A DNA stretch of 64,000 nt. It comes from Paragordius varius. Its lineage: Eukaryota; Animalia; Nematomorpha. Below the pieces are notes generated by a model. That model was not told the DNA's origin and did no database searches. It worked only from the letters and a program-made list of their open reading frames with translations. A program made the position numbers and the translations under genes. Where the stretch lies: NCBI GenBank assembly GCA_964247055.1, contig OZ176050.1, forward strand, positions 12,400,001 to 12,464,000. Direction: 5' to 3'. Shown here piece by piece: positions 4,680-60,025 of the stretch; the stretch's first letter is position 1, and every line of letters begins with the position of its first letter.

Positions 4680-7600
4680 ATGTTATCAGCTCATCTTCAA
4701 TTATTATCATCTCTTAATTTGTTTTTTGTACGCACTAATTTTGTAATAATTGTCTTGTCAAATTTTTTTATTTCAATTATCTTTTTAATCGCAGCACTGC
4801 TAATAATTTGTTGTCTATGGTACCCGAGGAAAAAATGTTTATTAATTAATAGTTCATATTTTGTAAAAACTACGATAATAATTAGTCTTTTACCGAGTTT
4901 GATTGGTAAAAATTCTGCAAAAATAGAGGCTTCAACTCTAAAATCTCCAAAAATCAGCTCAAATGCTTTCACCCCACCACCCTCATTTATTACAACAAAG
5001 ACTCAGTTTGAAATAGTTGGGCACACACGGTTAATTCAAATTCGACAAGGTGCTATAATTGGTACAATATGGAAGCCAAAATATAAATTATATCCAATTC
5101 CTCATAATTTCGAAAAAATTAATCCCAACAATCTAAATCCAAAAGTAAATCCAAAGGTAAATCAATACTATGTTGGCTCAGGCAAAAAATCACCGCCAGT
5201 CGTTAAGACATATTTGGGTATAAAATTTGCCAGTGCAGGCCCCCAACGTAGATTTATGCCGCCTGGGCCAGCCCCAAAATGGAAAGGTTTACTCAATGCC
5301 ACAATGTTGGGTCCAATATGTCCCCAAAAATTACTGGAATTTACCAAAAACACTAAAGATACATTACAAAATTTTAATTCCCACACTTTTTCCAATCATC
5401 AAATAAAACATGATAAATCACAGAAGGTTGATGAAAATGTACAACAGTTGAACATCAATGAAGATTGTCTAAATCTGAATCTTTATATTCCTGACTTTGA
5501 ATCTTCTCTGGCTCCAAACTACAATAGTAAGTTGATTTTTCTAATTTGTGAGTATACTATATATTATCTGTGTGCTTTGCTTCCACTAAATTCGTCGAGT
5601 TTTTGAAAAACACTTTCAACCCAGTTTATAGGAAGTAGTATTATATAGTCAAAATATTTATGGATTATAATAGAACCAAGCCCATTTCCTTTCATAATGA
5701 TAAGCTTTTCAACCATTTCCTTTCTTATATTTTTAAGTCCTATTTTTATAATTGTTTAAATTAATCACTTTTGGGACTCTGATTAATCGAAAATAGTGCT
5801 AAAACTAAAACTTGATTTTTTGAAGAAAAAATTTAAAATATTTATAAAATAATTAATTGCTTAAAACATTTTATTTTTAAAATGGTCTCATGATGCGCAT
5901 TATTAGCCATGTATTTCCCCCTCAATATTGGTTATTGTAAAGAAACTCCACTGTTTTTTGTATCTGAGTTTAATTTTATTCTTAGCCGCCTTCTACGGTG
6001 TAATTATTTTAATAATTTAAAATATTTAGCCTTATATTCATTGACAGCTATTTTCATAACCTATTTAATCCAAATAAATCATTAAAAATCAATATGCAGG
6101 TTATTTGCATATTTATAAATAATTTTAACTTTATCATTTTTAACAGATGTCAAATATGGATACTAAATTTTATTCAATGAAATGTGTTATTATAGTTATG
6201 TTATAACATTAGGTTATAAATATTCATATAAGGAATTATCCAACCTCTATGCTAAAGCTTATGAAAAATTATCATTTTTAATTATGTTAATGGATTTTAA
6301 TAAGGTGGCAAAGAACGGACTCTATAAAATTTAATTTTTAATTTAGAAAAAAGTTTTTTTATATATTAAAATTATCTTAATGCCAGAAGAAAGCATCATC
6401 AAATATTGATTTATCATGGGAATTCTCAGTTTTACCTTGGTTTAGTTTATAAAATTTGGACGTTATTATTTATTTAAGAAAATCGAAAAAATAAAATCTG
6501 TCAAAAATATCAATAAAATATATATGTAAATAGTTTTACATAAAAAACTAAAATTATACGGCAAAACGTAAAAATGTAAAGACAAATATTTTTTTCTAAA
6601 AATCTACTTTAATATAACTCAATGTTTTAGATGGCAAAGTGTGAAATAGATATGTAAATTACTAACACAATCAATTCTATATTTTACAATTGTAACTAAA
6701 TAGTTTATATAGTAAGGTTGAAGTATGGTTGTCTTTTAGATATTGTCTTAATATTAGTTGGTTTTGTCCGTATAAAGTTTTTATTTTTACTGTAAGTCGT
6801 CTCAAAACTTGATTCAAACTTTTATGGTGGCATTTAAAATTCGAGTAAATATGCGAAATTAAAATACAGTTTTTTATAGAAGAGTATAAATTGGCCAGCT
6901 ACAGTTTGTTTTCCCAATTTTTCTAGAGTTTAAAGGCACGTATATATTTGATAAAAACAGCTGTGATCTTTGAAATCAAGACCTAACGATAATAATTAGC
7001 TGCATTAATGCAATTAAATGCAAATAACATTTATTTTTTAACATTATAGCGAGTTTTTATAGCGAGAGCTATTCTATAAAAAATCTAAAATTAATGTTTG
7101 GCGTCAAAAAGTTGAGTTGATGATTTTTTACAATATTTTTCTAATATTTTTCTGATTACTTTTAAATTCTATTTTGAATTGGTGCCTAATCATGGAAATT
7201 TTAAGGAAATTTGAAATTATAGGGTAAAAAATCACAGTAGAAGCAAAATAAAGGTTAAATTTTAGATCAGGTATGTCCAACACCCGGCCCTCCGACATTT
7301 TCTTAACAAAATTAATATTTCTTAAACAATTTTTCGAATTTAATCTATCCTATTGGCAGGAAGTATAAAAAAATTGCGATATTGTGCTTGTATTTTACAG
7401 TCTTACGTTTAAAATCTAATAAAATATTTACAAATGACCAATATTTCCGAATGCGACCAGCAAAGCCATTTATGTTGGACATCCCTGTTTTAGTTAACTT
7501 TTAATTTATTTTTTAAAAAGATTATGCGCGCACAAAAAATAATTATCATGGTGAAAATTAATTATAATACTAAAAATAATAGTTGTTATCAATTTTCTAA

Positions 7601-26951: not shown

Positions 26952-29900
26952 TTAAACTATAGTAGTTTTGTCAGGAAGTAAAACGTTGGGGAGTGCAAAC
27001 GGCTGTTTAAAATGAATCATTTGGGCATTATTTTCCTTATCGAACATAATGAGTGGTGTTACTTTAATAATTTCTTGCGCCGTGATATTTTCTAAGGCTC
27101 CATCAGTAGATAATTTAATGTTTGGTTCAATCTGGCCCATATTATATTGAGCCGAATAATATGAATATATAGGATAGTAGGATATTTCTTCCTGAATACT
27201 ATTAGGTTCAACACAGTTATTACTCATGCTAACAACAAGATTCTCATCATCTCGGTTCTTTATGTAACGAGTTGTTATATAATTATTTGACTTATTACAG
27301 TTTTTTTGGTTTCTAAGACGGTCATGCAGATGTGTTGTTGGAGAAATATTACTAAATCTGATAGCTTGTTGAGTCGTCTTATTTTCAACAATGTTCTCAT
27401 TTGGTGACCAAAATACATTATCTTCATCACATTCTTGTAGGGCGGCTGGTGCATTACATAAGTATTTATCATTATTATCAAGGCCGCTTAATTGATAGCT
27501 GCTACCACCTTTTATCATTGCGGTATTTGGGGCGTTGAAATGCTCAAGTTCATTAATACAGATTGGGTGGTGATGATTCAATTTTTCCTGATAATTTTGA
27601 TAACTATGATCAAAATCATTAAAATTGACATTATTATTATTATTTTCATGATTATAAAATAGCTCGACAGTTGTCGCATTACTCAAATTGAAAGAGGACG
27701 AAGATTGGGGCCAACCTGTTCTTACGCCATTTTCAAAATTATTTTCTTGTTGCTGTAAAAAATAATGGTGTTGATGTTTGGGTGTTCCACTTTCTCTACC
27801 AGCATTTAAAAGAGCATATTTATTGGTTGCAATAGTGGCATCAATCGTAGCCGTTATTTGATTTCCATTTTCTAATATATCATCGTTATTATTATTGAAA
27901 TCACGTAGAGTTTGATTTAAACTACCTTCGTGGTGGTTATTATGATTAATATAATTTAAATTATTGTAATAATCGATGTAGGATGCGATCGGACTCCTTA
28001 TGCCATTATCTATATTCAAAGAAAAAATGATATTGCTTAAAAACTGATTGTGATAATCTTTAGAAATATAAATATCCTACATTCATCTTTTAAAAAGATA
28101 TAATTTAGAGGAAATATTATGTAATTAATTTGGCTATTTATAAAAAATGAACATTATAAAAATAGCTAAACTCACCGTTGATTTTTGTTAAATGATGCGA
28201 TTTAGACATAGCCATAGGACTTTTATTCGTATTCTTTCCACAATTCGGTATAGTATCGTTTGGTGGCAAATGCATTGTATTATTATTATTATTATTATCT
28301 AAAACTTGGGTTTGCGTGGTTGATTTCCCAATAATTTTTACATTACCATATATTCCATTCATTGATTTAGATTTATGCTTGTTGTTGCTACCGCCTCTTT
28401 GATGTCCTGGTTTAGGCTGAAAAAAAGATTTTAACGTCCCGCTGAAACCGGATTTGGGTACAAACGGATTTTGTATGACAAAATTCTTTTTGGAGGGCGT
28501 TGATGATACATCTTTGTCATTGTAACAATTATAGGGGTAATTGTAACACGTAATATTTTTGGGCGGCGTCACTTGAACATTAGGGGAGACATTTTCATCT
28601 TTTACTTTAGTCTGTTTATCAACAAGTGTAAGATTACCGTTCTCATAACAGGAATAACCTTGATTAGCGCTCCCGTTTAAACTGGATTTCTTACCATTCA
28701 TCATATGTCCTCCATTCGCTAACTTCTTTGACGACGCAGTATAATTTTTCTCTTTTTTGTCGCCATTTTTATTACCGTTAACTCGTTGTGAGATTCGTCT
28801 GCGCCAAAACATACAAAAACCACTTACGACTGCGATAAAGAGAAAACCCATGCCTACAATCAATAGGATAGCGTAGAGAGTAGATATGGGACCCACAGAT
28901 GTGGTCAGTTTAGGGTCAAAATCATTATTATTATTAGCATTATCCGAATTTCTAAGATAATTATTTTTAGGGCCATCAATAGAATTTATTTGTTTCTGAT
29001 ACTCGGTATTTTTGTCTAATAAGTAATGGTAATTGCCACGAAAATTTGGAATATCCTTATTGTCAAAAATATTGCTGATATCGCTAGCAAAATCAGAATT
29101 TTGTCGTTTCAACTCTTTTCCTGCCATAGGATATGCCGGTTTCGATTCATAAGGCGAAAAATTATTGAGAGCTTTAGGCATGGGCGATTGTTTAATGTAA
29201 AATGCCTTACGTGCACGGAAATCAAATCTTTCACGATATTCATATTTGGGTATCACCTCTATTTTTTCACCCTTCCCTACGCTAACATTTTCATATTTTC
29301 TATCCCTAGAATCGTTTATGATGTTATTAACAGCTTCTGTGTTATCGGATTTAACAATTGGAATAGTTTGTAAAGGAACACAAGAATATACACCTGGTTT
29401 AGGGCAACGCATAACCAAACGAGTATTTAGGGCAAAGAGTGGTGAGACACTATCATTTTTTGACATAACATTCCACCAAAATTTATGATTGCTGCTTGGC
29501 GGCATAAACGGTAACGAATCCAATGATCGATTATAATCAGAGGCTAACAAATATAACTGATCATTAGGTTTAATAAGATGATTATATAATCCATTATTGT
29601 CGAGGGAAGTAACTTCCTCATAGGTGGATATAGGCGTCGTTTGTGTCGTTGTTGTCAAGTGTACATTCATTCTGCGTGATCGCTTTTTAAACGCCACCTC
29701 GTCGGTTGAATCCTTTAGCGTTACCAGAGAATTGGAAACGTAATGGTGTAATGATTGTTCAGATATTACGCTGTATTGGGGATTGTATTCGGAACTCTCT
29801 TGAAAAATCCACACTACCCGTGGTAAAGGATCTCCCAAGAAATAGCATTCAATATCGAGAGTCGAGATGGGCGTGTTTCCATCACGTAAACAAAAATCTT

Positions 29901-32900
29901 CAGGATCTTTGTTAATTCTATTGCTTTCGGGATTGGTATCTATTTTAAGAATTTTTTGGGTATCATTCATATGTTTTCGTTTTAGGGGTGTTTTTTCAAT
30001 AATTTGCCATACGTGAAGTGTATTTAAAGGGTTTACCATATCGTCAACTATTGAATTCGGTTCAGCTGTATTCTGAGTGACCGGAAGTTTAGTTTTAGAG
30101 TTTACATCACGATTTATATGTGAAGACAAATGTGTCAATAGCAATGGACCACATACGAAATCGTCTGTCCGTAAATTTTCCCAAGTAACATTAGCTAGGT
30201 GTTCAGGGCCCCGGACACAGCACAAGGCATTAAATGGATTTATTTTATCATAGGTGGAATTAATCATTTCACCATCTTCATCCTTAATTTTATTTTCAAA
30301 ATCAAAATTTAGGGCAAAAGCTTTCTTATTTTGCCCATTATTTGATTGTTCTAGCGTCGTCCATTGTTTGAAAGCACGCATCCGGCAATTACATTCCCAC
30401 GGGTTAGAACTGGCATCCAAAAATACTAATTGGTTCAATTGATAAAATAAATCAGGTCTAATTGCACCCAGCAAATTTGCTGATATTCTTAGCGTTTGTA
30501 GTTGATGGAGTCCGTTAAAAGCACCGGTTTCAATATGCGTTATCTGACAAGCTGCTATTTCTAGCACTTGTAATCTACAAAAATATAAAATAAATTTATC
30601 ATCATAAATGTATATGAAACTTGTGACATATCAAAAATAATTTATTTGTTCACAAATTTCGATCTCATTTGTAATAACAGGAAAAAAATTCTTAAGTATA
30701 CTTGATATTTAAAAAATAAAGAGGTATCAGGATTTTTATTAAACGCTGATCGGCATCAATTTAACCGTGTATATTTGAATTAAAAGAAGAATATTAGTAA
30801 TTTAAGTTGAGTGCAAAATTATCTCGAATTCACAAATAATGCCATTAATTTTAAAATGTCATAATGTCAAAACCTTGTGGTCCTGTATGTTTAAACACCA
30901 GCGTAAAGATCAAAAATGTTCTATATCCCTAAAATTAGGGCATTTGCCTTATAATTTATAAAAATCAAAAGGCATAGACATTCGTTTTCTTTAACTTTTT
31001 AAAATAGCAAACACTAATATTGATCAAAAGATATATTAAAATCCAAAAAACTATTTTAAATGGTTGAAATAATTAAAAACGTTTAGTCGTGCCATGTTAC
31101 TATAATGTATACAATTCAAATTCACCCTCAAATAAATTATATGTTTTTCTTGATTAAAACATATATTTTTTATATTTTTATATAAATTAAATTTTGTTTT
31201 AATTTAAAAATAAGGAAAAAATAATAAACTATTCCATGAATATATTTCATATATATAATGGGTTATATTAGTTCGAAAACACATAATTTATTTTTAGAGT
31301 GAATTCAAATTGTTCAAGGGTGAAAAGGTGAATTTGAACTGTATATAAAATGTTATAAATTTATTAGGCCTTACTATTTAATCTGTTAGACCTAATATTT
31401 TTTTATGCTAAATCTAACAAATTAATTAGTAAATATTTTTAAATAATTTTTGAGCCTCTGTATTTGACTAGTTAATTAAAATTATTTTCCCGGTTTAATA
31501 TGGACTTAGAGCTTAATTTATGTATCATCTTCTGTAGACAAGCTACTTTGAAGTTACTTAATAATTTTATAACTATTGCATAGATAAAATAATTAAAAAA
31601 AGGGGAACTCATTGGTATTCAGTTATGATAGCTAAATTTTAGAGTAAAATAACCTAAACTAAGAATTAAGTATACAAAATGATTGTGGCTGTCAAAAGCA
31701 TTTAACATCAAGTGCTACTAAGAAATATTTTTAATGTTCTAATGTCAGTATATTGTTAAAACTTCCAGAAAAATTCATGTAGTTCCACGAAACTAAATAT
31801 TCACCTTAAAATTATTACAACACCAAAGACATATTTGACAATTAAAATACTTTTAATTTGGTAATTTTTAATATAATAGGGTTTTAAAACCGGAAACTCT
31901 TTAATTTATTTTTCCAATTTTTTCGACACAATTTTAACTCTATCTAAAAATGTCTTCTATATTGTATACTAATATTTTTGATTTTTAGATATTATCACAC
32001 AATCAAATGCGCTTAAAGTATTTCAACTTAAAAACAATCGAACCGAAACTGTATTTGCCAGAATTCAAGACAAATTCTATATCTCTACTAAATATATCAT
32101 ACATATCTATTGTTCCCTTTCATAATAAAAAATATTTGGAAATTTAGTTATCAAAATTATTGGAATGATGATTAGAAAACACAACAACTATTTTTCGCTT
32201 TTTGTGGCTTCCCTAAACATAAAATTTTATATATTTAATCAAAATTGACAGGTATGAATAAAAAAAAATGCCAGAAACCGCCATTTTTTGCCAATGAAAT
32301 AAAATGCTTATTAATGCGACATGATTTCATAAAAGACAAAACAGACCAATCGTAAAATTATTTTTACCTAGAGCCGTTTTTTTGAAAGGGAAATTTTGTT
32401 TTAATTAAAAAAAATAAAACATGGTGAGAGAGTGCGAATCTTGAATTTTAAACATCAATTTTTGACTTTTTGTCCATTTTGGACGTTGCCTTTATATTAT
32501 ATGAAAAAAAATCACCTATGATCAAAAATATAAAAAATTTGCAGGCAAATTTCATAGGATTTAACAACAGTGTAGCATTTAATTAAATATAATTGAATTA
32601 ATGGTTGATTTGATAAAATTAATTAATTGTTTAATTAAAAATCTAAACAGCGCCTTTTTGTCCCAGTTTTTTAATTTTCACAGAATTCTTAATTTCCGTA
32701 GAAACTGCTTATAGTTCGCACATGTGAATTTGAAATTCCAACATATTGCTTTTGAAGGCAGAGTTAAAAATTAAGGTTTATGACCCTTAGTCTTGGAATT
32801 ACACATATGTTAAGTATTAGTTATTTTAATTAATCATTTATTAACACATCAAATCTGCAACTATAAAATCGTTGATTTTGCATTATAAAAATATAAAATG

Positions 32901-35900: not shown

Positions 35901-37859
35901 GATAGCACTTAATTTAAATTACCTATAATTAGCTCCGCCTATCTTTCTGCATCAATAATTTACAAAAATTAAAAATCAACCTAAAATATGTGCATGCAAA
36001 GAAATTAGTCAATCAGTCATATAATAATACACTTTAGGATTTTTGATAGTAAAAAAAGATTTTTTGCGTAAATAAATTACATTATGTTTATGATGAGCAT
36101 AAAGTTAGAAAAAATATCTTACCTTACGCAAAGTTATGAGAAAATTATAGATTAGTGGAATAGGAAAATAAAAGGACATGTCACAACGCGCTACGGTTCA
36201 TTAGGTTTTATCTTTCTTTATTTATAAGATTTTTATAAGTTTATATAGCGATAACATAGTAGCAGGTCGATATTCTCTGTCCATATATTTATTTATAATA
36301 AACATATAAAAATAGTACCAAAATAAATTTATATTTTTTTGATTGTATAAAATCACTTATAGATTCTGGATATCTCACATATGTATATACATATAAGGTG
36401 ACATACAGATATAAGGCATATCAATATCTCAATATATATATATATAATGGTATATAATGTGAACAAATCGCATGATTAAACACAAGATAGATTAAAGAAT
36501 GAAAAAAATTCTTAGACTCTGGAATCTATTAAATAACTTTTATTTATATAAAATGCCACCAATATTAACTATCTTAACCATTAGTTCAGCTATGATGTTC
36601 TCTTAGATGTTCGCAATAAATCATTCAATTCCTGTAACTCAATTGAAATATTTATAAAAATTGCTTAAAAATACATTTTAATATTACTAAACTAGACTAT
36701 AACAAATTGTTTGGCTTACGATTGGCATTAAAAAATAACATAAAATGACCAATGGAAAATAGGGTTAAATTTGACCGTGATAGTTTCCGCTTAAAAATAA
36801 CTAATCAAAAAACTTTGAAAAGTGTGTTTTTTATCAGGTGTTCGAAATTAATATAAAAAAGCGGTATAAAAACCTAAATTTAATATTAACACACCGGTTT
36901 TTATTTTTGATCTGTCAAGTTGACCCTAAACAAAAATAATGTTTTGACAATACCTGTAAGTTAAATGCTGCATTACATATTAATTATGGCGTCAATAATA
37001 AATAATTTATTAAAGGTGCTACTCTCTATTTTTATTTAAGTACAACAAACTGGTTATTTTTATTGATGTTTATTAATAACAGGAAAAAATTAAAACGTTT
37101 TAATGTAAAAGGTTAATAATTTATTGCTATTTTTGACAACCTTATTAATATTACAAAACTAAAAGAGCTACTTTGTTGGTCTCCGTTTCCTTTTTTACAT
37201 ATAATTTTAAATTTTTTATACATTTAAAACTATATCGATTAATTATACCTAGGACAATGGATAAATGAATTAGGCATTAGAGTTCGTAAGGGATTATGCG
37301 AAAGAATTAAACTTTTTAAAAATGGTGTGTCTTGTAAACTTCCTGTAGGTACGGTCGCTAGTTGATTTTGCGATAAATCCAAAGATTTAAGGAACCTTAA
37401 ACCATAAAAAGCTTTGGGATCAATGGTGGTTATGGTACAATTACTAACATCCAATGATAAAAGATTGGTGGACCCTGTACGATAAAAAGTTTGAGCACCC
37501 ATGTGTGTGAGGTTAGGGTTAGACCCAAGTAATAAATGCTTAGTTGATGCATCAATGGCATCCGGAATTTCGTGCAAGCTTTGGGCTTCACAATTCACGG
37601 TATAAACATTGTTAAGGGTAAAACAATTACAACCTACCGTATGCGGGCACATTAATTTATGTCGTTTTCGTTTAATTTGTGTATCCGTATGCCTCCTTTC
37701 CTTATTTTCATAATAATGATTATTACCGGTATAATTGTTATCCTTATGCATCATGTTTTTGTGGTAATCAAGTTGAAAGTTTTTTGTTTCTGAATGTCTC
37801 AAATTGATTTGAGGATAGTGCAAAGATTTTGGAAAACTTGTTGTAGTTATATTAGCCAT
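26952..37859 (-). CDS. Kekkon-like LRR + Ig + TM receptor. Coding exons 37859-37249, 30574-28176, 28009-26952; about 1355 aa from ATG 37859, true 5' end uncertain
   Basis: LRR-NT (CPHTVGCNC..VNC), LRRs (LKSLDLSQNQLATVP; LQVLEIAACQITHIETGAFNGL) and LRR-CT (NPWECNCRMRAFKQW..HLANVTWENLRTDDFVCGP, like Kekkon 'WDKLDVDDFACVP'). Ig cysteines (IECYFLGDPLPRVVW ... GVYSC), TM (LYAILLIVGMGFLFIAVVSGFCMFW-RRR) and C-terminal TTIV PDZ-type motif. Junctions AG|gtataa..tgtag|A and G|gtgagt..atag|AT keep frame. Confidence 0.85.
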
Positions 37860-46557: not shown

Positions 46558-47837
46558 TCAAGAATTCATCATAACATATACTTGACCGATATTATCGTAA
46601 TCATATGTTCGGTTTAAAAATGTATCTATTAACCGGATTCCAGATATTGACTAAAAGAAAATACTTTAATTATCAAAACCGATTTTGTAGATAAACATAG
46701 AAATTAAGAAGTAAAAATTACGCAACTTAAAAATCTAATACAATATTCAAACTTAAAAAATAAGTTTTATAAATAAATGTAATGCAAATAAATATAAATG
46801 CCGCCATATTCTATAATTAATTCTTTGAATGTTAACATAATCCGTATTTTAAACATGATTAAAAAGTTTGACAGATCAATATAAAAAAGTGTAATATGCA
46901 TCAAAAATAAATGGATTTAACTTTAAATCCAGGTCGTGTGGCATAAAGAGTAAAGTTTAAAACATTAAAGCAATTAGGTTCAAGTTTTCCCACATGTTTC
47001 CTCAGAATTCCGATCCAATACATATTTTGCGGTTCGTTAAAATCATCAATCAATTCCAAATCTAAGTCCATACTTCGTTCACTAAAAAAAAGATAAGTAG
47101 TAAAAGAAATATATTTTTAAATAGCCTATTTTACATTATGTAAGTCAAAAAATCATAATTTAGGATTTTTTGGATATTCAAAAACAGAAATTTTCAAAAA
47201 ACTGTTAATGCACCATAATTTAGTGAACAATAGTACCAATGACCCAGGATGCGTATTAAAATATTATAAAAACTATTATATGTGGCGTTTTGTGTTCCAA
47301 TAATTTTGTAGGCTTAAAAGTTTTTCAAAAAATTAAGATTATCAACATAGCTATAAAAGCGTATTAAATGCGCCGAAATAGTCAAGTCACTTTTTAATAA
47401 TGGTTAAGAAAATTTCGTTTTTATAACTATTGTATAAGTCCAAAATCGTGCCTTGAAGCAATTTTTTGTAAAAGGGGTAGTAAAACCTATTTAAATATAA
47501 TGGCATATACATATAATTTTTATATGCGTTAAATATAGTCACACCTTGAACTAGCGCCTCGAATTGGGTCTACTCCGTGTTTAATTGATTATTGCAAAAA
47601 ATAAAGTCTTCAAAAATATGTTTGAAAGCGATTTCTCTGAAAAACTTATAGGGCCATATAAAATATATGATTTTAGTTTTTCTTTTATATAAGTAAAGAT
47701 TATGGTTAAATGCGTTTTTTTAAGGTGCATTTGGTAAAGACCTTCGCCCTATATAAAATACGCTTTTACATAACGTGACTTTGAAACAATAATGGAAAAA
47801 ACATGGCGCCTAATTTTCATTCGGCCATTTACATTTT

Positions 47838-47878
<41 letters not shown>

Positions 47879-50800
47879 TTTTAAAACGTCGCTTTGATTA
47901 GGAATTTATATTTAACGGCAATTTTATTTTTTTGATGCAGACTTTTGAGAAGAATTAAAAAAATAAAATTATATAATTTACTCACGTGAAATTGGTAAAA
48001 CGGCAAATAACTTCAAACGTTTCTTCAACGCCAGCTTGATCGGGTATCTGTTCGATTTGGCAAAATATATCGGGTACCACTGTAGGCTAAAAATTTATAA
48101 GTACCTATTATAGGCGCTTTTATTGTGATTAAAATTAATTGTATGTAAGCATTGTTAATCATTAATGAAAAAATCGTGATTCTGAATAAATCTGTGTCAG
48201 GAAAAATTATTATAATGTATATTTGTTTTATGAAATTTATTTAGCCCTTTTTGTTTAGTTCAGGGGTCAAAAGTTAATGAAATGAATATCAATCTATTTA
48301 AATCCATATTTGTTCAAAAATTCAATTGATTCACAATCAGCCTGTAAAAAACAGTTAATCAGTTTCATTATCAATTTAAAATCTTTGATAGGATATCTCA
48401 TGAGTCACCTTGATTAAGTAAAATTATTTTCACTTTTTTAAAAAAAATCAATATTTTTATAAAAAAAGTAAATCTAATAAAATTAATCAAAAACTGCTTT
48501 TATAAAAAAAGTAAACAAATTCAAATCAGAAACTGCTTTTATAGGCTAAAATGAATACGATGCGCATAGTTTTATTTCAATTTAAAAATTAATTTTAAAA
48601 TACCAGTCTATGTAAAGGGCTAGTTTGTAAGGCACCCTTTTCACCATATGGGCCACGCCATCCTATCTGGAGCTTTCCAACTTCTGTAACTAATTTGTGT
48701 TTCGATAAGGAAAATATAATAAACTGAAATTTAAATAAAAATACTTTTAAGGATAATTGAAAATTAATAATGTACAAATCATCATAGAACTAGCTTTTGC
48801 CATTTAAATCGCTTAATTATATCATAGAATAATAAAGAGAGAAATACTCAGGGGTAAAATATTCTAAAATCATGGTAGATAACAGTTGGGCCATATATAT
48901 AATAGCAGGGGTAGAAATGTAAAAAAATTACTTTTAAAATCAATTTCAAAAACTCAAAAAGATTTAATGATTATAAATTTGTCCTGCACATAGCAAACAG
49001 TAAAACAAAGGTAGTTTTTAGTGGCGGAAAGAGATAGACATACATTACTACAACATAATTCGACATAGAAAACAAACATGTTCACTTGAATATAATTTTT
49101 AGATTTCCTTTAAATGGTTCTTTCCTGCTCAACAAGAAATAATATTAGTATCAGAATTTTGTCCATGCGATATAATATATTTGTAATATGTTTGAAGAAT
49201 ATGAAAATAATACGCACAAGGGCTACTTTGTACCCATAAATTATGCCGACCCTTCTTAAAATACAAAAAACATATTCCGCAACAGAAGAAAGAGATATGA
49301 TTTTGTGATTAATTTGGACAAATGTGGATTAAACCTTTATACCATGAGTGGCTCTAGAAAGAAGCTATCCGGAAAATGTGTAATTATTAAACACACCCCC
49401 AAACACACTTAAACGCTATATAAAGAATGATCGGTTTTTATTAAAATTAACGGTTATTAAATATGAAATTAAACTGGAAATTATATGATGCCGAATTTTA
49501 AAATTCTAGGGGATGGTATATATGATAATTTCAAGCCCATATTTTATAGGATTATTCAATCGGCAAAATATAAACATTCCATTTTCATCCCTCTATAAAG
49601 GATAACTTTTTTTATATTAGTAATTGAATTTAAACGAAAACAAACCCAATGGAAAACATTTTTGCCAACATTATATATTGATGACATGATATTTATTTAA
49701 TACCTTACACTAACGAAAATTGTATAATAAATAGATGATATAAAAGATAAAACATATAACTTACTTAATAATGCCTCTTTACTTAGGATTGGTTTTTGTC
49801 TAATGTAAAGTCCAAACAAATATTGACGCACATCATTGGGCATAAGGCAATTGATATCGTTGAAGATTAACCTGGAGAAAAAACAAAAATTCTTTATAGT
49901 TTAAAATAATTTTATCAAATTTCATAATTAAATAAATTTCTACTGAGTTTCATCTTTGGAATGATAATTAAAATCTTTAACGATATAGTTGGGATGTGGT
50001 AACAAACTCATTTGTTCCAAAACCATAGGATTCGATGTTAAATTTTGGACTTGCGTTTCCAAGTAAACTTGTCCATTCTGCGTAAAAGAGAAATAGGAGT
50101 TTATAAGGTTTCGTCATAAAGCGTAAATGACATTAAATATTTAGCAATATAATAAAGATGCTAAATAAAACTTATGAATTCCTCTAAATTTTATACAATT
50201 TTTCTAACATACATACAGAGCCGCATAAAAACTATTTAAAAAGCGCCTAAAATCCAATTGGTAAGTGCTAACAATTTTCCATTTGTAAAATAAGGCTCCA
50301 ATATTAAATATTCGAATTATACTTTTCGATAATTGATTATATTATATAAATGAAAATTACCTCTAAAAAAATTTTATGTTTATAAAGAGTCATGATTCAA
50401 AAAATCCATTATTTTTTTATAGTATTCATTAGATGGGTAGTTGACAGCTTTAATATTAATAATCTTTAGTGAACACATTTTTTTTCTTCCCCTCTATTCG
50501 TCTGTTGGGCTTTTTATCATAGCTACTTTTATTGAGATATAAATACATGAATAAAATATTGTTTATTAACATACATCAGAATTGTAAAATTTCGTTTTGA
50601 CATCCAGTGGTTTGTTGACTTGAAACTTAAAAAACTTTTTGAGTTGTAAAACATTACTGTCATCTTTTCCCGCGTTGGATGACACTACATCAGGCTTAAG
50701 GGTGTATTGAACTTCGCATATTAACCTGAAAAATATATAATTCAATTTAGTTTTTAAATCAAAAAAAATATTTTATTTAAAATTAAATTTGATTGCACAA

Positions 50801-51356
50801 AAATGCCTACACATGAGGGCCCAGTTCCTTAACTTCGTGAGATACAATGCTGTCAAAATTTGTTTTAGCACCAATCTCATTGGGTGTGCTAGAATTATTT
50901 TCGGTGGCAAAAATGCATAGTTTTTGAGTTGTGGTTTGGACATATATCTGTTGTAAAACAATTATGAAGTCAAGTAATTATTTTATAATATTTTTAAAAA
51001 TTACCATTAATGATACATTGTAAACACTTTGATCGGACATGGGATTGTGTATAGTGACGTAAGCTTTGAATGTTTCGCCTAAATAAATGGTCCTATTATA
51101 TTTAGACATAAAAATACCCAAATGTTTGAGGCAATTTCATACGTAAACCAAGTGATGAGGGATATTCCAAGTCAGAATTCGTATTACAATTGGCTTCTAA
51201 ATCGTATTTCATTTGATCGTAACAATAATCTTGCTGCTCCCCGATGGCATAAAGATTTGAATTAAAATGTGGAACTGATAATCTCATAACTACATAATTA
51301 AAGTAATATATAACACCTTTTAATTCTATGTACTGTTTATCGGCTATTATACTCAT
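46558..51356 (-). CDS. TRAPPC13: Trafficking protein particle complex subunit 13. Exons 51356-51317, 51289-51118, 51092-51005, 50947-50811, 50725-50575, 50077-49944, 49871-49765, 48689-48604, 48086-47986, 47081-46922, 46650-46558; 422 aa
   Basis: The spliced translation follows TRAPPC13 collinearly: LKVMRL..P, LPQTFG-TIYLGETF, HEVKELGPHVLIC, KKFFKFQVNKPLDVKTKFYN, VYLETQVQNLTSNPM, LMPNDVRQYLF, VGKLQIGWRGPYGEKGALQTSPLHR, IPDQAGVEETF, ERSMDL, SISGIRLIDTFLNRTYDYDNIGQVYV*. All 10 introns are GT-AG and exon lengths sum to 1269 nt (423 codons). Confidence 0.93.
47840..47874. repeat. (TA)n microsatellite in a TRAPPC13 intron
   Basis: Direct reading. Confidence 0.9.
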
Positions 51357-51453
51357 TGTGGCGTTTCTAAATTTTAAATTTTGTTACTAATAAAGCATGC
51401 AAATATTTTTCACATGTTAAATTTACTTTCCTCGTTTCGACCCTTGTTGTCAT
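51357..51453. promoter_or_regulatory. 97-nt spacer between divergent TRAPPC13 and numb start codons (putative bidirectional promoter or overlapping 5' UTRs)
   Basis: ATG at 51356 (-) and ATG at 51454 (+). Upstream of the numb ATG the frame is closed by TAA, with no AG acceptor between that stop and the ATG. Confidence 0.55.
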
Positions 51454-52784
51454 ATGGAGCGGTTGAGGCGTAGCTTTAGAGACAGTTTTCGAAAACACAA
51501 GAAAAATACTCATAAAAATAATACACTTGAAATCTCAAAGCCTATTGAATGGCAAGCGGATGAAATAGCTGTAAAATCTGGATCCTGCAACTTCCAAGTC
51601 AAGGTAAAAATATTTTTTATAATGTGTTTGAGTTTTTTATTCAATTTTTTTATCAAAATTAATTTAATTATTCTTTTTTAAACAGTATTTAGGATGTACC
51701 GAAGTTTTTGAATCAAGGGGCATGCAAGTTTGTGAGGAAGCTTTTAAAGTTTTAAAAGTAACTTTCAATTTTGTAGCAACCTTAATTGCTTTAACTGTTT
51801 CATACTAAATTATTACCTTATTTTTTAATTTTTTAGCGTGGAACTAAAAAACCTATACGATCAGTCTTGCATGTCAGTGGTGAAGCCCTTAGAGTTGTTG
51901 ATAAAGACTCAAAGGTTAGCTCTTAGATAAGATTTACCAATTTGATAATCATAATTTTCTCTGCTTTTTTATTTTTTCGTTAGATTTTAAAATTCGGTTG
52001 TAAATATGGTTTGCTGAAAATTTCGGCTTTTCACCTTCAAATCATTGATTTGGACACGAATGTAAGTAGTTTATTTGTGTCCATCCGTTCTCTTGTCCCT
52101 ATTTATTTTCATATTTGTCCCATCACTGTAGTTTTATATTTTTTGTCGCAAACTATTTAAATTTTATTTTTTTATAGCTCAATTTTAAAATAAAACGTGT
52201 TTTTTGAAAATATTCACTGTGTTTATAAATATGAAATCTACAGAAAGTACGAAATTTTATGTGACAAATAAAACTTTATTCCGCATAGAATTTCATTTAC
52301 TAACATTTTGTGGTGATTTAAAAATGAAAACTTGTAACAAGAAATTTAATTTTTTGGTTTTATGGTTATTAATTTTTATTTATTTTTTATTAAATTATAA
52401 TAATTGTCTAGGTCTTTTGAGAATTTTTGAATATCTTCAGACTAAATTTTCCCAAATTATTTTAGAACTTTTCATTATTTTAATAAAATGGTCGGATAAT
52501 TAATATTTTGATTTTACCTAATTTCATAATATAAATTTTTATTTACGTAATATATCATAAATTTGCTCAACGCATTTACGAAGGTTAATTTGTTTTATAA
52601 AATTAGAGTTAGATTTTATAGATAAATTGGGAATATCATATATAAATATTATACATTGTTTATATTTTTTATGTGGTGTAACAGTCAATCTGATTTGCGT
52701 TGTGATTTTATTACATTCTATCAATATTTTAGCTATTATCTTTATATATAAATATAAAATATCTTTTGGCAATTTGGGAAGACA

Positions 52785-52824
<40 letters not shown>

Positions 52825-55339
52825 TTTTATGTCTGATTTTGTTCATATTTTTAATTATTTAAATTACAACTAATTTAAATATTTTAGTCATGGTTCATAG
52901 ATGGTCTGTTCTCTGCTTTAAAATTGACTAAAAATATATTTAACGTCAAGGTATAAGGAAAAACAAGGGCGATATTTGTAATCATTTTTAAGGGCTGAAT
53001 AATGTTGAATTTCATCAGATATTATCGAATTCAATGGTTAATTAAAATTTTGATATAAATTAGGGTAGCTTAATTTAGACCAGGCTAAATCATAAAATAG
53101 AAAAAAATCTAAGTATTTAAGGGCATTCAGTGGTGTTCATATTTTTAAATTAATTGAAGGCATTCCATATTTTTGTAATTATTTGATTTCGGGGTATTTA
53201 TCTACCTCAATTCGTATCGAAGGGCATCCATATTTTTTCTTGACTATTTAGTTTTGTTGTCGGTAAAATTAATTTGGATCTTGACAAAAAATTTAAATTT
53301 TTAAACTGGATTTGCTTTCTTATGATATTTTATTTTTGTTTTTCTTTTCACACATAAAATTGTCGTAATGTGTCATTGTCACACACACCACGCGTTAAAA
53401 ATCCTTTTTTACTTTAATTATATATTATTTTTTATTTTTCATTTTAAATTAGATTATGTACATAATAACTATCTATGTATTGTAGCCTGAGGGATTTTTT
53501 GCAAAATGAAATGTATTTAGTTACTTATCCATATTAATTTTTCATGCGTGTTAATAAACTTTTTCTTTTTGTTTTTAAACGGGAAAATGTGATCAATAAT
53601 ATTATGATTTCAAGAGTCCTTATATAAAAGTATTGATTCTATCATCATTAATATTATGTGACTTGTCTTTTCTATTATTCTTCTTAATTTTTCTCGTAGA
53701 ATATATTATAAGTAAACTGTAACTTTATAAGTATCCTGACTTGTTACAAATGTATACAGTAGTATTAAAAAAATGTTGCTTTTTACAAAAATAATTGGGC
53801 GATCCTGTTTTAAATTTGAGTTTTAAATGATCAGTTAAAGTGTTGAGTATTTTTAAAATTGACATTTTTAAAGTTGAAATAAACATTATTCGTTAATATA
53901 TGTATATATGAGTATTTAGATGGCCTTATTTTTTAACCTTAAACATGCATGATATTGTGATGAGTTTGATTTATATTTTGACTTGGAATTTGGACTTTTG
54001 TTAATCTCAACGAAATTCCCTAATAATAAGTACAGAAATACGGACAAAGCGTAAAAATATAAAGACAGATATTTTTTTAGAGATACCCATACTTTTTAAT
54101 CTTAATTTTTATAAATTATATCTGATTGTTTTAAACTTCAAAGTATAAATTAGAAATGTATAATTGGTAACACATTCAATTTTATAATTTACAGTGTTAA
54201 TTAAATATTTTATATAAGAAAAGTTATAAGATTTAAAAAAGTATGGTTGATTGTCTCATGAAAAAAAAAAATTTTATTATTACGTTATGTCCTAATTTCA
54301 ATTTTTACTGTGAGTTTTTAAAAGTTATTATATAAAGCAGTTAGTTTTTGAATTTATTAAAAAAAAACCGTGTTTTTAAGTAATATTAACTTAAATTAGT
54401 GCTCTTTATTTCTTAATAATATGAAATAACTTTAATATTAAAGCGTCTGTAATACAATATATATGAAAAATTTGTAGGGACTAATTGTCGATCAAACGAT
54501 AGAAAAAGTTAGTTTTTGCGCACCTGATCGGAATTACGATCGTGGATTTTCTTACATTTGCCGGGATGGAGCTACGCGACGATGGCTATGTCATGGCTTT
54601 ATGGCTTACAAATATTCGGTAACATAACTTAATTTTTCTTAATTAATTGCTTTTTTGAAATTTAAAACTGTATATTTTTTGCTGCATAAAAAACTATAAA
54701 GATTAATTAATTACTTTAGTGCATAACATTGGTATTAGGAATGGTTTATTATTATTATAATTAAGAAATAGATTGAGGATAGGGTAGTTATATTGGTAAA
54801 GAATTGTCTGGAAACAATATATATATTAATTTAAAACCTATAAAGGTATAAATACTGTACATTGTAAAATTTCGATAACTCTGAATATTCAATAATATTT
54901 TTAAAAAGGGACATGATTCATTCAAAATGATATAAGAAAAAATTGCATCTGATTATGTAATAATAAATCTTTGCCCTTTTAATTATAATTAAATTAGTTT
55001 TTGCACTTTTTAATTATCCTGTACTTGTTACAAATAGAAACAAGGTCCTATCGCCATGTTCAATCGAGGTGCACGAGTTAAGGTAAGTAAGATTATTATT
55101 TCTTCGTTATCTTTCCAATAACTTTGATTGTGTTTCTACTCTGCCTGTTTTTCTTGGGAATTTTATTGCACATTTGATTATTACACTGTTTTCTGCACAT
55201 TATTACTTTCTCAGTTTATGATCACTTCCTAAACTCTATCATTTGCCTTATTTTCCTCCTAAAGCTTTTCTTTCTTTACTAATATGAATTAATCTTAAAT
55301 AATCTCCTAGATTTGGGTTTTTACCATGCTTTATTAAGC

Positions 55340-58300: not shown

Positions 58301-60025
58301 GAAGCAGCCATTCTTCTCTTTACTCAAGAATAAACGCCATCTTTTTGGACGAGGTTTCTTCATTATTAAGATTTAAAATGATTAATTTAATGTATAGTAC
58401 GGTTTATATAAACCTTATAGAATTTTTTAAATTGTGTTACTCTTAGATTAAAATTCCACATTTACATATCATATATAATGCGTTTTTCTTTTATTCATAC
58501 CTTATACCATTGACATCAGACTTTATTAATTTTTCGTTTTTAAATTGTGTATACAGAATTAAGCTTGCCAAACGGTGTTCTCATAAATTCACCCCTTCGA
58601 CCTCAGTCTCACAATGAACCTTACAGTAAAAGTTTTGACAAAGCATCCAACACAGCCATTTCTAGCCAAACTAATGCCATGAATGGAAGCGTTGTTGGTG
58701 CCCGACAAAGACCACCCATCAAAATGGATTTACTACGCCAAGCGTCATTCAGGTGCCCACATTTATCCTCAAAAAAAGATTTTTCTCCCTTTAAAAAGCA
58801 ACTTTCACTGCGATTAACTGAATTACCTTCTACGTTAGAGCGCATAGCTTCTTCAAATGAAGGATCTTTGACTAAGACATCACCTCAAAATGTCAACTAT
58901 AATACTCGGAATAATAATGCTAATCATAATAATACTTCATTACTCTTTGAATCTGATTTGGATGAAAACGCCGATACTTTGAGTAATGGCACAAGTTGCC
59001 GAAAAGAATTAGATTTTACAGAAAATGGCCCCCATGCCTTAGGCCGAGATATAAATGAATTATGTAAACAAATTTCGAGCAATTTTCCAATATCTCCGAC
59101 GACCACTAACGTATCACAAACAACGGAACATTCACCTTTGGACCCTTCTCCCCTAGCTTATAATGCAAAAGAACAATATACAACTGAGACGGAATTCCTA
59201 AAAAATCAAAATTTTAATTCATCGAAACCTATTCCTCCAATCATTAATGGTAATAATACCAATTCTCAGCTTTATACAAAGTATGATTCGCCATCTCCCA
59301 CCTTTCAAACTACACATTTACCCAAAAGGAATAAACAACCTCATGCTAATCATCAGTCAAATTCAGCGGTCTATTCTTTGGATTCTATTGATGGAACCCG
59401 TAAATTTGCGCTAGAAAAGCATTCTAATCAAAACATGGGCGAAAAGGGCCACGTCGCCACTCATTATTATAATACTGATAATACTAAGCATAATAATTTT
59501 AATGGAAATGATGCGAATCATGAATCCAAACAACATAATTTTATCATAAACATTCAAAATAATTTATATCATAATAGCAGCAGTGAAAATCATAGTACCA
59601 GCTATAATCACAACCATCAAGGTCATACAAATGGGTCTTCTGGTACATCCGGGCAAATGAATCAGCCATATCATTTCAACAAAACAAATCCCTTTCTCCT
59701 TTCACATCAATACATTGTTCCATCATATAATCATCAACATAGGAATGAGGGGGAGCCGTATGACATGAAACCCAAAAATTTACATTCACACAATATTGGT
59801 GTCATTCGAAAAGAATATTATCATGCTCAAAATAATGGCGGTGACTATAACATTAATAATAATAAAAGATCAACAGCTGATTTTGTACCCTTGAAACGAG
59901 CAGACGATGAACAAATGATTGGTGCATCAGTACCTTTGAATGGGTTTTATGTCACGAGACCTTTTTCACGTGCTACAACTAATCCATTTCTCATTCCCGT
60001 AACTAATATAGGCTCACCCTCATAA
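51454..60025 (+). CDS. numb: Numb endocytic adaptor (PTB domain, NUMB domain, NPF motifs). Main exons 51454-51603, 51686-51757, 51837-51914, 54478-54618, 57945-58353, 58557-60025; about 772 aa
   Basis: [33 protein letters not shown]|[24 protein letters not shown]|[26 protein letters not shown]|[41 protein letters not shown]..|[24 protein letters not shown]-domain motif [28 protein letters not shown] and two NPF motifs. The 58354 donor (gtttct) is weak but phase-compatible. Confidence 0.95.
51984..52061 (+). CDS. numb: Putative alternative (mutually exclusive-type) numb exon 3b, 78 nt, [26 protein letters not shown]
   Basis: Long pyrimidine tract plus ttag acceptor and perfect gtaagt donor; phase 0/0; same length as exon 3 (51837-51914). 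Residue pattern [16 protein letters not shown] aligns without gaps to [16 protein letters not shown]. Confidence 0.75.
52787..52820. repeat. (TA)n microsatellite in numb intron 3
   Basis: Direct reading. Confidence 0.9.
54031..54312. mobile_element. MITE family A copy in numb intron 3
   Basis: TACAGAAATACGGACAAAGCG..AAGACAGATATTT ... AAGTATGGTTG..TTTTTACTGT. Confidence 0.75.
55038..55082 (+). CDS. numb: Putative 45-nt numb cassette exon, [15 protein letters not shown]
   Basis: aaatag acceptor after a T-rich tract and AAG|gtaagt donor; phase 0/0, stop-free, and GC-richer than the surrounding intron. Confidence 0.5.
55342..55372. repeat. (TA)n microsatellite in numb intron 4
   Basis: Direct reading. 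Confidence 0.9.

What the first reader, a model, noticed from the sequence alone, without database searches (positions are those of the whole stretch)
51093..51117. Obligatory 25-nt GT-AG intron in TRAPPC13
Seen: the conserved motif LPQTFG|TIYLGETF is interrupted on the minus strand by GTATTTTTATGTCTAAATATAATAG (25 nt). It is not a multiple of 3 and contains an in-frame TAA, so it must be removed to make the protein. Established: spliceosomal introns this short are exceptional in animals, where most minimal introns are longer than about 40 nt. Inference: this lineage's spliceosome handles ultra-short introns while neighbouring genes have introns of 1-7 kb, implying an unusually wide intron-size range.
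Basis: partly seen in the sequence, partly recalled or inferred. Interest (0 to 1): 0.75.

Follow-up and report, generated by a model that had tools for sequence, protein, structure and literature searches.

The report
Tiny 25-base intron, hairworm TRAPPC13
A housekeeping trafficking gene of a horsehair-worm-like animal is interrupted by a very probably real intron only 25 bases long, one of a genome-wide class of 22-29-base introns that sit in the same genes as introns of up to a kilobase, a combination not yet described for any animal; I could not reach RNA to see the cutting.

Summary
On the minus strand, 51117-51093 is a 25-nt GT...AG segment that breaks the invariant TRAPPC13 motif LPQxF-G-(N/T)IYLGETF, shifts the frame and brings a TAA into frame. 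Removing exactly these 25 nt rebuilds the motif. The motif is contiguous in 114 of 115 animal homologues and in the closest relative, Gordionus (61% identical).

The gene is intact, with 11 exons, 10 GT-AG introns and all three Pfam TRAPPC13 domains in order. It is single-copy in the 110-Mb assembly.

A second tiny intron of 27 nt lies 173 nt upstream. The other eight introns are 57-1,075 nt.

I checked the class myself in six other genes: RPL3, BiP, EF1A, alpha-tubulin, beta-tubulin and SSR4. Together with TRAPPC13 they give 18 GT-AG introns of 22-29 nt, and these essential genes cannot be translated without removing them. U1 and U2 snRNA genes look canonical.

This scan has already noted the same intron class many times elsewhere in this genome, but not this intron. 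Published animal introns under 30 nt are limited to myxobolid myxozoans and Dicyema.

The parts
51093..51117 (-). Intron 2 of TRAPPC13: 25 nt, GT...AG, phase 2 (splits a Gly codon GG|G). This is the finding.
   Evidence: Removal joins Gordionus residues 69|G70|71. An in-frame TAA follows if it is retained.
51290..51316 (-). Intron 1 of TRAPPC13: 27 nt, GT...AG, phase 1 (splits a Val codon G|TT). Its length is a multiple of 3 and it has no in-frame stop, so retention would add 9 residues.
   Evidence: LK-V-MRL is contiguous in 102/102 homologues that cover this region.
51317..51356 (-). Exon 1 (start codon at 51356-51354)
51118..51289 (-). Exon 2, ends ...KLPQTF + GG
51005..51092 (-). Exon 3, begins G + TIYLGETF...
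50948..51004 (-). Intron 3, 57 nt, ordinary short intron
50811..50947 (-). Exon 4
50575..50725 (-). Exon 5 (FFKFQVNKPLDVKTKFYN motif). It is preceded by the 85-nt intron 4 and followed by the 497-nt intron 5.
49944..50077 (-). Exon 6 (TRAPPC13_M domain starts here)
49765..49871 (-). Exon 7
48690..49764 (-). Intron 7, 1,075 nt, the longest intron of the gene (43 times the length of intron 2)
48604..48689 (-). Exon 8
47986..48086 (-). Exon 9
46922..47081 (-). Exon 10 (TRAPPC13_C)
46558..46650 (-). Exon 11 with stop codon (TRAPPC13_C end)
51079..51142 (-). It is in frame but deletes 13 residues of the invariant motif. It is a rival or possible minor isoform, not the main model.

Best explanation
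Window 51117-51093 (minus strand) is a genuine U2-type GT-AG spliceosomal intron of 25 nt, the second intron of an intact, single-copy TRAPPC13 gene of a nematomorph (horsehair-worm) genome.

It is probably recognised across the intron itself (intron definition) using minimal signals: GT plus A/T at the 5' end, an A-rich patch about 8-11 nt before the 3' end (candidate branch site CTAAA, branch A 15-16 nt from the 5' end), and TAG at the 3' end. The major spliceosome that would excise it has U1 and U2 snRNAs with canonical recognition sequences.

If the intron is retained, the message hits a TAA five codons later, so only the spliced form can encode the protein.

Shown here:
- the anatomy of the intron;
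- the exact restoration of the conserved protein;
- the integrity of the gene;
- the existence of the same class in essential genes;
- the presence of canonical U1 and U2 genes.

Inferred, not shown: the excision itself, the branch point, and the mode of recognition.
For: (1) GT/AG sit exactly at the frame break.

(2) Pfam TRAPPC13_N runs collinearly across the gap, 7-65 then 63-88.

(3) The Gordionus TRAPPC13 protein (XP_065314516.1) aligns to 11 exons with residues 69|70|71 at the junction. Identity is 255/416 (61%), and there is no other lesion.

(4) In a 115-homologue alignment the motif is contiguous in 114.

(5) Only the 25-nt option among 8 frame-restoring GT/GC-AG pairs keeps the motif.

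(6) There is one TRAPPC13 locus in the genome, with the M and C domains present.

(7) The class is supported by my own tests:
- RPL3 has 7 introns of 24-29 nt.
- BiP has 23 and 28 nt.
- EF1A has 24 and 22 nt.
- alpha-tubulin has 29 nt.
- beta-tubulin has 25 nt at the codon 19/20 site.
- SSR4 has 23, 22 and 23 nt.
- With the two TRAPPC13 introns, all 18 are GT-AG, 8-26% GC, GT followed by A or T in 17 of 18, with A enriched at -8/-9 and T at -3.

(8) The U1 5' end ACTTACCTG and the U2 GTAGTA box are present.
Against: No RNA evidence exists for this intron or, in my hands, for any member of the class.

Three word searches found no protein from this species.

The stretch just before the 3' end of this intron (ATATAATAG) lacks the short T run seen in most of my 18 examples.

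A normal-sized 64-nt alternative with a better pyrimidine stretch before its AG exists and is in frame.

I could not fetch the Gordionus locus, so I do not know whether the intron position is shared there.
Confidence: 0.88

Rival explanations
1. The gene is mainly spliced with the ordinary-sized 64-nt intron 51142-51079. This gives a TRAPPC13 lacking 13 residues (MKLPQTFGTIYLG), and the 25-nt segment is never used as an intron on its own.
For: The 64-nt pair is GT-AG and in frame, and has a T-rich stretch before its AG. Its length is in the range that every animal spliceosome handles.
Against: It would delete the most conserved block of the N-terminal domain, which is contiguous in 114/115 homologues. 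The 39 nt that would then be intronic still encode 12 of 13 residues identical to Gordionus. That is not expected for unconstrained intron sequence in a pair that is only 61% identical overall. Essential genes such as RPL3 and EF1A show that this genome must remove 22-29-nt segments anyway.
Confidence: 0.04
2. Assembly artefact: a longer intron was collapsed or partly deleted in the assembly, leaving 25 nt.
For: I could not inspect raw reads.
Against: The 25 nt are not repetitive. The assembly is highly contiguous: 44 contigs, with this one 15.2 Mb. Seventeen other segments of 22-29 nt in seven genes on five contigs all keep exact GT-AG ends, which random collapses would not do.
Confidence: 0.03
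3. Decaying pseudogene: a 25-nt insertion has frameshifted a dead TRAPPC13 copy.
For: The segment does shift the frame and bring in a stop.
Against: It is the only TRAPPC13 locus in the genome. All 11 exons are open, all 10 junctions are GT-AG, and the three Pfam domains are complete and collinear. Conservation is concentrated in the family's invariant motifs.
Confidence: 0.02
4. The segment is removed or bypassed by something other than the spliceosome, for example programmed DNA elimination in somatic cells or translational bypassing.
For: Nothing positive. It is only that excision at the RNA level has not been seen.
Against: Strict GT...AG ends in 18/18 cases are the signature of spliceosomal introns, not of TA-bounded eliminated sequences. 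Canonical U1 and U2 genes are present. The beta-tubulin example sits at a site where an unrelated organism's ORF also breaks off right after codon 19. From my own knowledge, that is the classical first-intron site of animal beta-tubulin genes.
Confidence: 0.02

Closest known systems
Ultra-short introns of myxobolid myxozoans (Henneguya, Thelohanellus, Myxobolus) and of Dicyema japonicum (Hadjez et al., Mol Biol Evol 2026, PMC13644364)
   Same: These are GT-AG introns of 20-30 nt in ordinary conserved animal genes. The 5' signal is reduced to about GTa, the 3' signal is weak, and a few A residues lie upstream of the AG as the likely branch site. U2 snRNA is canonical (compared).
   Different: In those lineages the median intron is 22-27 nt, and short introns have short neighbours in compact genomes. 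Here the 25-nt intron shares a gene with introns of 497-1,075 nt. Ordinary 43-85-nt introns are also present. In my small sample the tiny introns come first in the gene. That paper reports short introns only in myxobolids and Dicyema among its 51 genomes, and its main text does not mention Nematomorpha.
Tiny introns of ciliates (Paramecium about 25 nt, Stentor 15-16 nt) and of the Bigelowiella nucleomorph (18-21 nt). Stentor is cited in PMC13644364; the rest is from my own knowledge.
   Same: The length range is the same, and the introns are GT-AG and very AT-rich. Retention usually creates a premature stop: 17 of my 18 examples shift the frame or carry an in-frame stop.
   Different: Those are unicellular lineages in which essentially all introns are tiny. 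This is an animal with a bimodal or broad length distribution.
Human ultra-short introns of 43-56 nt (discussed in PMC5435141 and PMC4675715, which I listed but did not read)
   Same: They are exceptions at the lower end of the intron size range within a genome dominated by long introns.
   Different: They are still about twice as long as this intron, and they are rare individual cases rather than a class found in most highly expressed genes.
TRAPPC13 of Gordionus sp. m RMFG-2023 (XP_065314516.1; CAK9297388.1, CAK9297389.1)
   Same: It is the closest available relative: 61% identity, collinear over residues 1-401, with an identical KLPQTFGTIYLGETFKAYVT block. Two Gordionus isoform models break off exactly at this gene's exon 8 and exon 9 ends (sequences).
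   Different: I could not fetch its genomic locus, so the intron position and length in Gordionus are unknown.

Membership tests
U2-type GT-AG spliceosomal intron | GT at the first two and AG at the last two bases | tested here: met
U2-type GT-AG spliceosomal intron | Removal restores a continuous conserved reading frame, and the segment itself is non-coding | tested here: met
   The motif is contiguous in 114/115 homologues, and a TAA is in frame if the segment is retained.
U2-type GT-AG spliceosomal intron | Branch-point adenosine at a workable distance from both ends | tested here: inconclusive
   A candidate CTAAA has its A 9 nt from the 3' end and 15-16 nt from the 5' end. The class shows A enrichment at -8/-9. 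No lariat data exist.
U2-type GT-AG spliceosomal intron | Excision seen in RNA | not testable with these tools
No same-species protein was found in the word searches.
U2-type GT-AG spliceosomal intron | Major-spliceosome snRNAs present in the genome | tested here: met
   Eight U1 matches and about 35 U2 matches score above the Rfam gathering score. The best copies that I read have the U1 5' ACTTACCTG and the U2 GTAGTA box.
U12-type (minor) intron | Extended 5' consensus (G/A)TATCCTT and a TCCTTAAC-like branch site | tested here: not met
   The 5' end reads GTATTTTT, and no TCCTT element lies within the 25 nt.
Animal ultra-short intron class (myxobolids, Dicyema; PMC13644364) | Length under 30 nt with reduced splice-site motifs and upstream A residues | tested here: met
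   This intron is 25 nt. In the sample of 18, lengths are 22-29 nt, GT is followed by A or T in 17 of 18, and A is enriched at -8/-9 (compared).
Animal ultra-short intron class (myxobolids, Dicyema; PMC13644364) | Genome-wide shortening: the median intron is under 30 nt and short introns have short neighbours | tested here: not met
   The same gene has introns of 57, 85, 497, 72, 1,075, 517, 904 and 271 nt. numb starts with introns of about 79 nt.
Animal ultra-short intron class (myxobolids, Dicyema; PMC13644364) | The intron occupies a position shared with longer introns of other animals | tested here: inconclusive
   There are only hints for this intron. An unnamed Logan ORF (P0026) starts with ...FS directly before TIYLGETF, as expected for read-through of a phase-2 intron. 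A crab model (P0136) has a 6-residue insert at the same site. For beta-tubulin the site match is clearer.
TRAPPC13 (Pfam PF06159, PF23647, PF23643) | N-terminal, middle and C-terminal domains present and in order | tested here: met
   39.8 bits against a cut-off of 25.3; M 40.7 and 31.6 bits; C 29.4 and 33.4 bits.
TRAPPC13 (Pfam PF06159, PF23647, PF23643) | Full-length collinearity with an annotated orthologue | tested here: met
   covering residues 1-401 of XP_065314516.1.

The most novel reading that the evidence does not exclude
Horsehair worms run two intron regimes in one transcript. One is a position- and expression-dependent class of 22-29-nt introns. These come first in the gene, and make up all introns I found in very highly expressed genes such as RPL3 and SSR4. 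They are recognised with almost no sequence signal by a spliceosome whose U1 and U2 look canonical. The other regime is ordinary introns of 40 nt to several kb further downstream. That would point to a recognition mechanism tied to the cap or to early transcription, not to U1 base pairing.

A practical corollary follows. Standard gene finders and BUSCO cannot model such introns. The low completeness reported for hairworm genomes (71.6% for Gordionus), and the large loss of universal metazoan genes claimed for the phylum (the title searched, a paper I could not read), could therefore be partly annotation artefacts.
Probability: 0.35. Interest if true: 0.8.

Novelty: new variant of a known kind. 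Interest (0 to 1): 0.65.

Why it matters
Animal introns under 30 nt were long dismissed as annotation errors. A September 2026 survey of 51 metazoan genomes accepts them only in myxobolid myxozoans and Dicyema, both with compact genomes (PMC13644364).

This TRAPPC13 intron and its relatives in RPL3, EF1A, BiP, the tubulins and SSR4 would add a third animal phylum. They would also be the first case in which such introns share pre-mRNAs with kilobase introns. That gives a natural system for asking how a spliceosome with canonical U1 and U2 copes with a 15-nt distance between the 5' splice site and the branch point.

It also matters practically. Aligners and gene predictors with minimum intron lengths of 30-40 nt will break or miss these genes. 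This bears on published gene-loss claims for Nematomorpha.

Tried and rejected
- A PDB sequence search with exon 1-2 and with exon 3 gave only chance hits or nothing.
- A word search with the 84-residue exon 1-2 ORF found no candidate.
- A word search with the Gordionus protein found 125 TRAPPC13s, but none from this species.
- To get RNA-level support for the class, I looked for a highly expressed gene with a tiny 5' intron and one exon covering more than 57% of the protein. Enolase, ATP synthase, EF1A, RPL3 and BiP all failed the length rule.
- beta-tubulin passed the rule, but the search returned only other organisms, at most 98% identical and with generic residues where this species differs.
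The Gordionus locus and any transcript contigs were therefore out of reach.
- The protein-kinase sweep showed many matches with in-frame stops. The one locus I opened was not informative, so I dropped it.
- An Rfam scan and a tRNA scan of the window found nothing.
Those lengths are therefore given only approximately.
- An apparent 18-nt intron in SSR4 was rejected. Read through, it encodes part of the conserved protein (the comparison with human SSR4 is from memory).
Exons were searched one by one by reference. The only joining was a local translation across the junction inside a script, to enumerate splice options.
- The contig is not human.

Full report
**What is there**

The window is very AT-rich (23-36% GC in 2-kb bins). 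It is piece C1:12400001-12464000 of a 110.5-Mb assembly in 44 contigs.

They start with GT and end with AG. Upstream, the frame encodes ...RMKLPQTF followed by GG. Downstream, after one more G, it encodes TIYLGETFKAYVT.... Read without removal, the upstream frame continues GYFYV and stops at TAA.

**Which gene, and is it alive?**

Exon-by-exon Pfam scans place the pieces on TRAPPC13_N in order:
- exon 2: profile positions 7-65;
- exon 3: 63-88;
- exon 4: 92-132;
- exon 5: 134-159.

Later exons match TRAPPC13_M (15-54, 60-85, 96-122) and TRAPPC13_C (21-68, 70-95). A six-frame search of the whole assembly finds a single TRAPPC13_N locus, above the curated cut-off.

The exhaustive representative search with exon 5 returned a 347-residue protein. 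The cluster look-up names it as a Gordionus sp. m RMFG-2023 gene model. The 409-residue RefSeq protein XP_065314516.1 is in the same cluster.

tblastn of that protein against the window, followed by exon-by-exon alignment, gives 11 exons from 51356 to 46558. All ten introns are GT-AG. There are no internal stops. Identity is 255/416 (61%), against 39% to a hemichordate and 32% to C. elegans.

The nearest annotated relative is therefore a horsehair worm of another genus. This agrees with what earlier notes of this scan say about the genome.

**The junction**

Gordionus residues 69, 70 and 71 (F, G, T) fall on the last codon of exon 2, the split codon GG|G, and the first codon of exon 3.

I aligned 115 full-length animal TRAPPC13s and then added each exon as a separate fragment. 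Exon 2 ends on the invariant F and exon 3 starts one column after the invariant G. 114 of the 115 proteins have nothing between them.

I enumerated all GT/GC-AG pairs that restore an open frame across the break. There are eight. Only the 25-nt pair keeps the motif. The others delete 5-22 conserved residues.

The 39 nt it would turn into intron still encode 12 of 13 residues identical to Gordionus. That argues they are translated. It could still be a minor isoform.

**A second tiny intron**

A 27-nt GT...AG segment lies at 51316-51290, between ...IELK and (V)MRLSVP. The Gordionus protein has a 9-residue gap exactly there. LK-V-MRL is contiguous in all 102 homologues that cover the region.

This segment is a multiple of three without a stop. 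Retention would therefore be silent to the ribosome, and I rate it probable rather than certain.

The full intron series is 27, 25, 57, 85, 497, 72, 1,075, 517, 904 and 271 nt.

**Is there really such a class in this genome?**

I tested this independently on conserved genes, using six-frame family searches of the assembly.
- **RPL3.** There is one locus. Two Pfam matches lie 26 nt apart at profile positions 170|172, and a third match has three in-frame TAA. Reading the locus shows seven GT-AG segments of 28, 24, 24, 26, 29, 26 and 26 nt.
- **BiP.** 23 and 28 nt, then 69 nt.
- **EF1A.** 24 and 22 nt, then three introns of roughly 60-75 nt. These last lengths were read off the three-frame display and are not exact.
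- **alpha-tubulin.** 29 nt directly after the ATG, then about 80 nt.
- **beta-tubulin.** 25, 43, 63 and 53 nt.
- **SSR4,** just beyond the window. 23, 22 and 23 nt.

These essential genes cannot be translated unless the segments are removed.

The 18 tiny introns are 22-29 nt long, 8-26% GC, and all GT-AG. The third base is A (10), T (7) or G (1). A is enriched at -8/-9 (13/18 at -8) and T at -3 (13/18).

The TRAPPC13 intron fits in length, ends and composition. Its candidate branch motif is CTAAA, 9 nt from the 3' end. The stretch just before its AG is A/T-mixed and lacks the T run most of the others have.

**Machinery**

The genome has multiple U1 and U2 genes above the Rfam thresholds. The best U1 copy starts with the canonical ACTTACCTG. 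The best U2 copy has the GTAGTA branch-binding box.

The tiny introns offer U1 little more than GU. Recognition must therefore lean on something else. That is inference.

**What I could not do**

I could not fetch the Gordionus locus to compare intron positions, nor any transcript contig.

None of the three word searches returned a protein of this species. Excision in RNA therefore remains unobserved for this intron and, in my hands, for the class. I could not check it.

There are hints that the TRAPPC13 intron position is old:
- An unnamed Logan ORF begins ...FS directly before TIYLGETF. That is the read-through expected of a phase-2 intron ending in AG.
- A crab gene model has a 6-residue insert at the same column.

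For beta-tubulin, an unrelated Logan ORF reads through into non-tubulin sequence right after codon 19. That is where the 25-nt intron sits here.

Exons were handled one by one by reference. Only a local junction translation was done.

**Comparison with what is known**

PMC13644364 (Mol Biol Evol, September 2026) states that introns under about 30 bp were considered absent from animals. It finds them only in myxobolid myxozoans and Dicyema japonicum among 51 genomes. It describes the same reduced signals and canonical U2. Its main text does not mention Nematomorpha.

Neither the Gordionus genome preprint nor a comparative preprint on Nematomorpha mentions introns at all. Full-text searches for hairworm or Nematomorpha together with intron found nothing relevant.

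The difference from the published cases is the company these introns keep. The published cases are compact genomes where short introns have short neighbours. Here the introns sit in a 110-Mb repeat-rich genome, in genes that also hold introns of up to 1 kb. Neighbouring genes have exons 6-7 kb apart.

In the five genes of my sample that have both kinds, the tiny introns always come first. Two of the five (BiP and beta-tubulin) were picked partly for that property, so the pattern needs a proper census. numb, next door, starts with introns of about 79 nt, so the pattern is not universal.

**Verdict**

This is very probably a real 25-nt spliceosomal intron. It is one instance of a class that this scan has now met many times in this genome. 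As far as the searchable literature shows, the class is unreported for this phylum. RNA confirmation is the missing step.

Noticed in passing
window 51290-51316 (-): A second tiny intron sits in the same gene. It is 27 nt, GT-AG, a multiple of 3 and without a stop. Retention would add 9 residues instead of truncating the protein, unlike 17 of the 18 tiny introns I collected.
   Followed up: yes
window 51357-51453: TRAPPC13 (start codon at 51356, minus strand) and numb (start codon at 51454, plus strand) are head to head, with only 97 nt between their start codons. This implies a very compact shared promoter and very short 5' UTRs, or leaders added in some other way.
   Followed up: no
L007 (G000:C5:4325899-4329453), L014 (C4:12480001-12486000), L016 (C1:9911001-9919000), L015 (C3:3256001-3262000), L017 (C4:4964001-4969000): In TRAPPC13, BiP, EF1A, alpha-tubulin and beta-tubulin, the 22-29-nt introns all precede the longer ones. 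In RPL3 and SSR4, every intron I found is tiny. This suggests that gene position and expression level both matter. The sample is small and partly selected.
   Followed up: partly
L017 2940-2964 (-): The beta-tubulin 25-nt intron lies between codons 19 and 20. An unrelated Logan-derived ORF (P0159) reads into non-tubulin sequence at exactly that point. At least this tiny intron therefore looks like a shrunken old intron, not a new insertion.
   Followed up: partly
G000:C6:565000-634000 and C3:257000-528000: U1 genes are clustered on contig C6, and U2 genes mostly on C3. Each cluster has many progressively degraded copies scoring below the Rfam gathering score. These are large snRNA gene or pseudogene arrays.
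   Followed up: no
window 48604 and 47986 (exon 8 and exon 9 ends): Two Gordionus isoform models (CAK9297389.1 and CAK9297388.1) diverge into short unrelated tails exactly after ...LHRL and ...TNFT. These are the ends of exons 8 and 9 here. Those two intron positions are therefore shared between the genera, and the Gordionus models are intron read-throughs.
   Followed up: partly
window 47792-47901 and 52539-52873: Long AT-rich microsatellite tracts, which translate as runs of IY/YI in several frames, lie in a TRAPPC13 intron and in a numb intron.
   Followed up: no
window 4680-5603 (+), 28141-30567 and 37242-37859 (-), 58547-60022 (+): These are the neighbouring genes. One is a carboxylesterase/neuroligin-like gene with only profile positions 24-96 of 515 in its first long exon. 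One is an LRR membrane protein with LRR exons 6.7 kb apart. The third is numb, with its NumbF exon about 6 kb downstream of the PTB exons. All are consistent with multi-kb introns next to the 25-nt one.
   Followed up: partly
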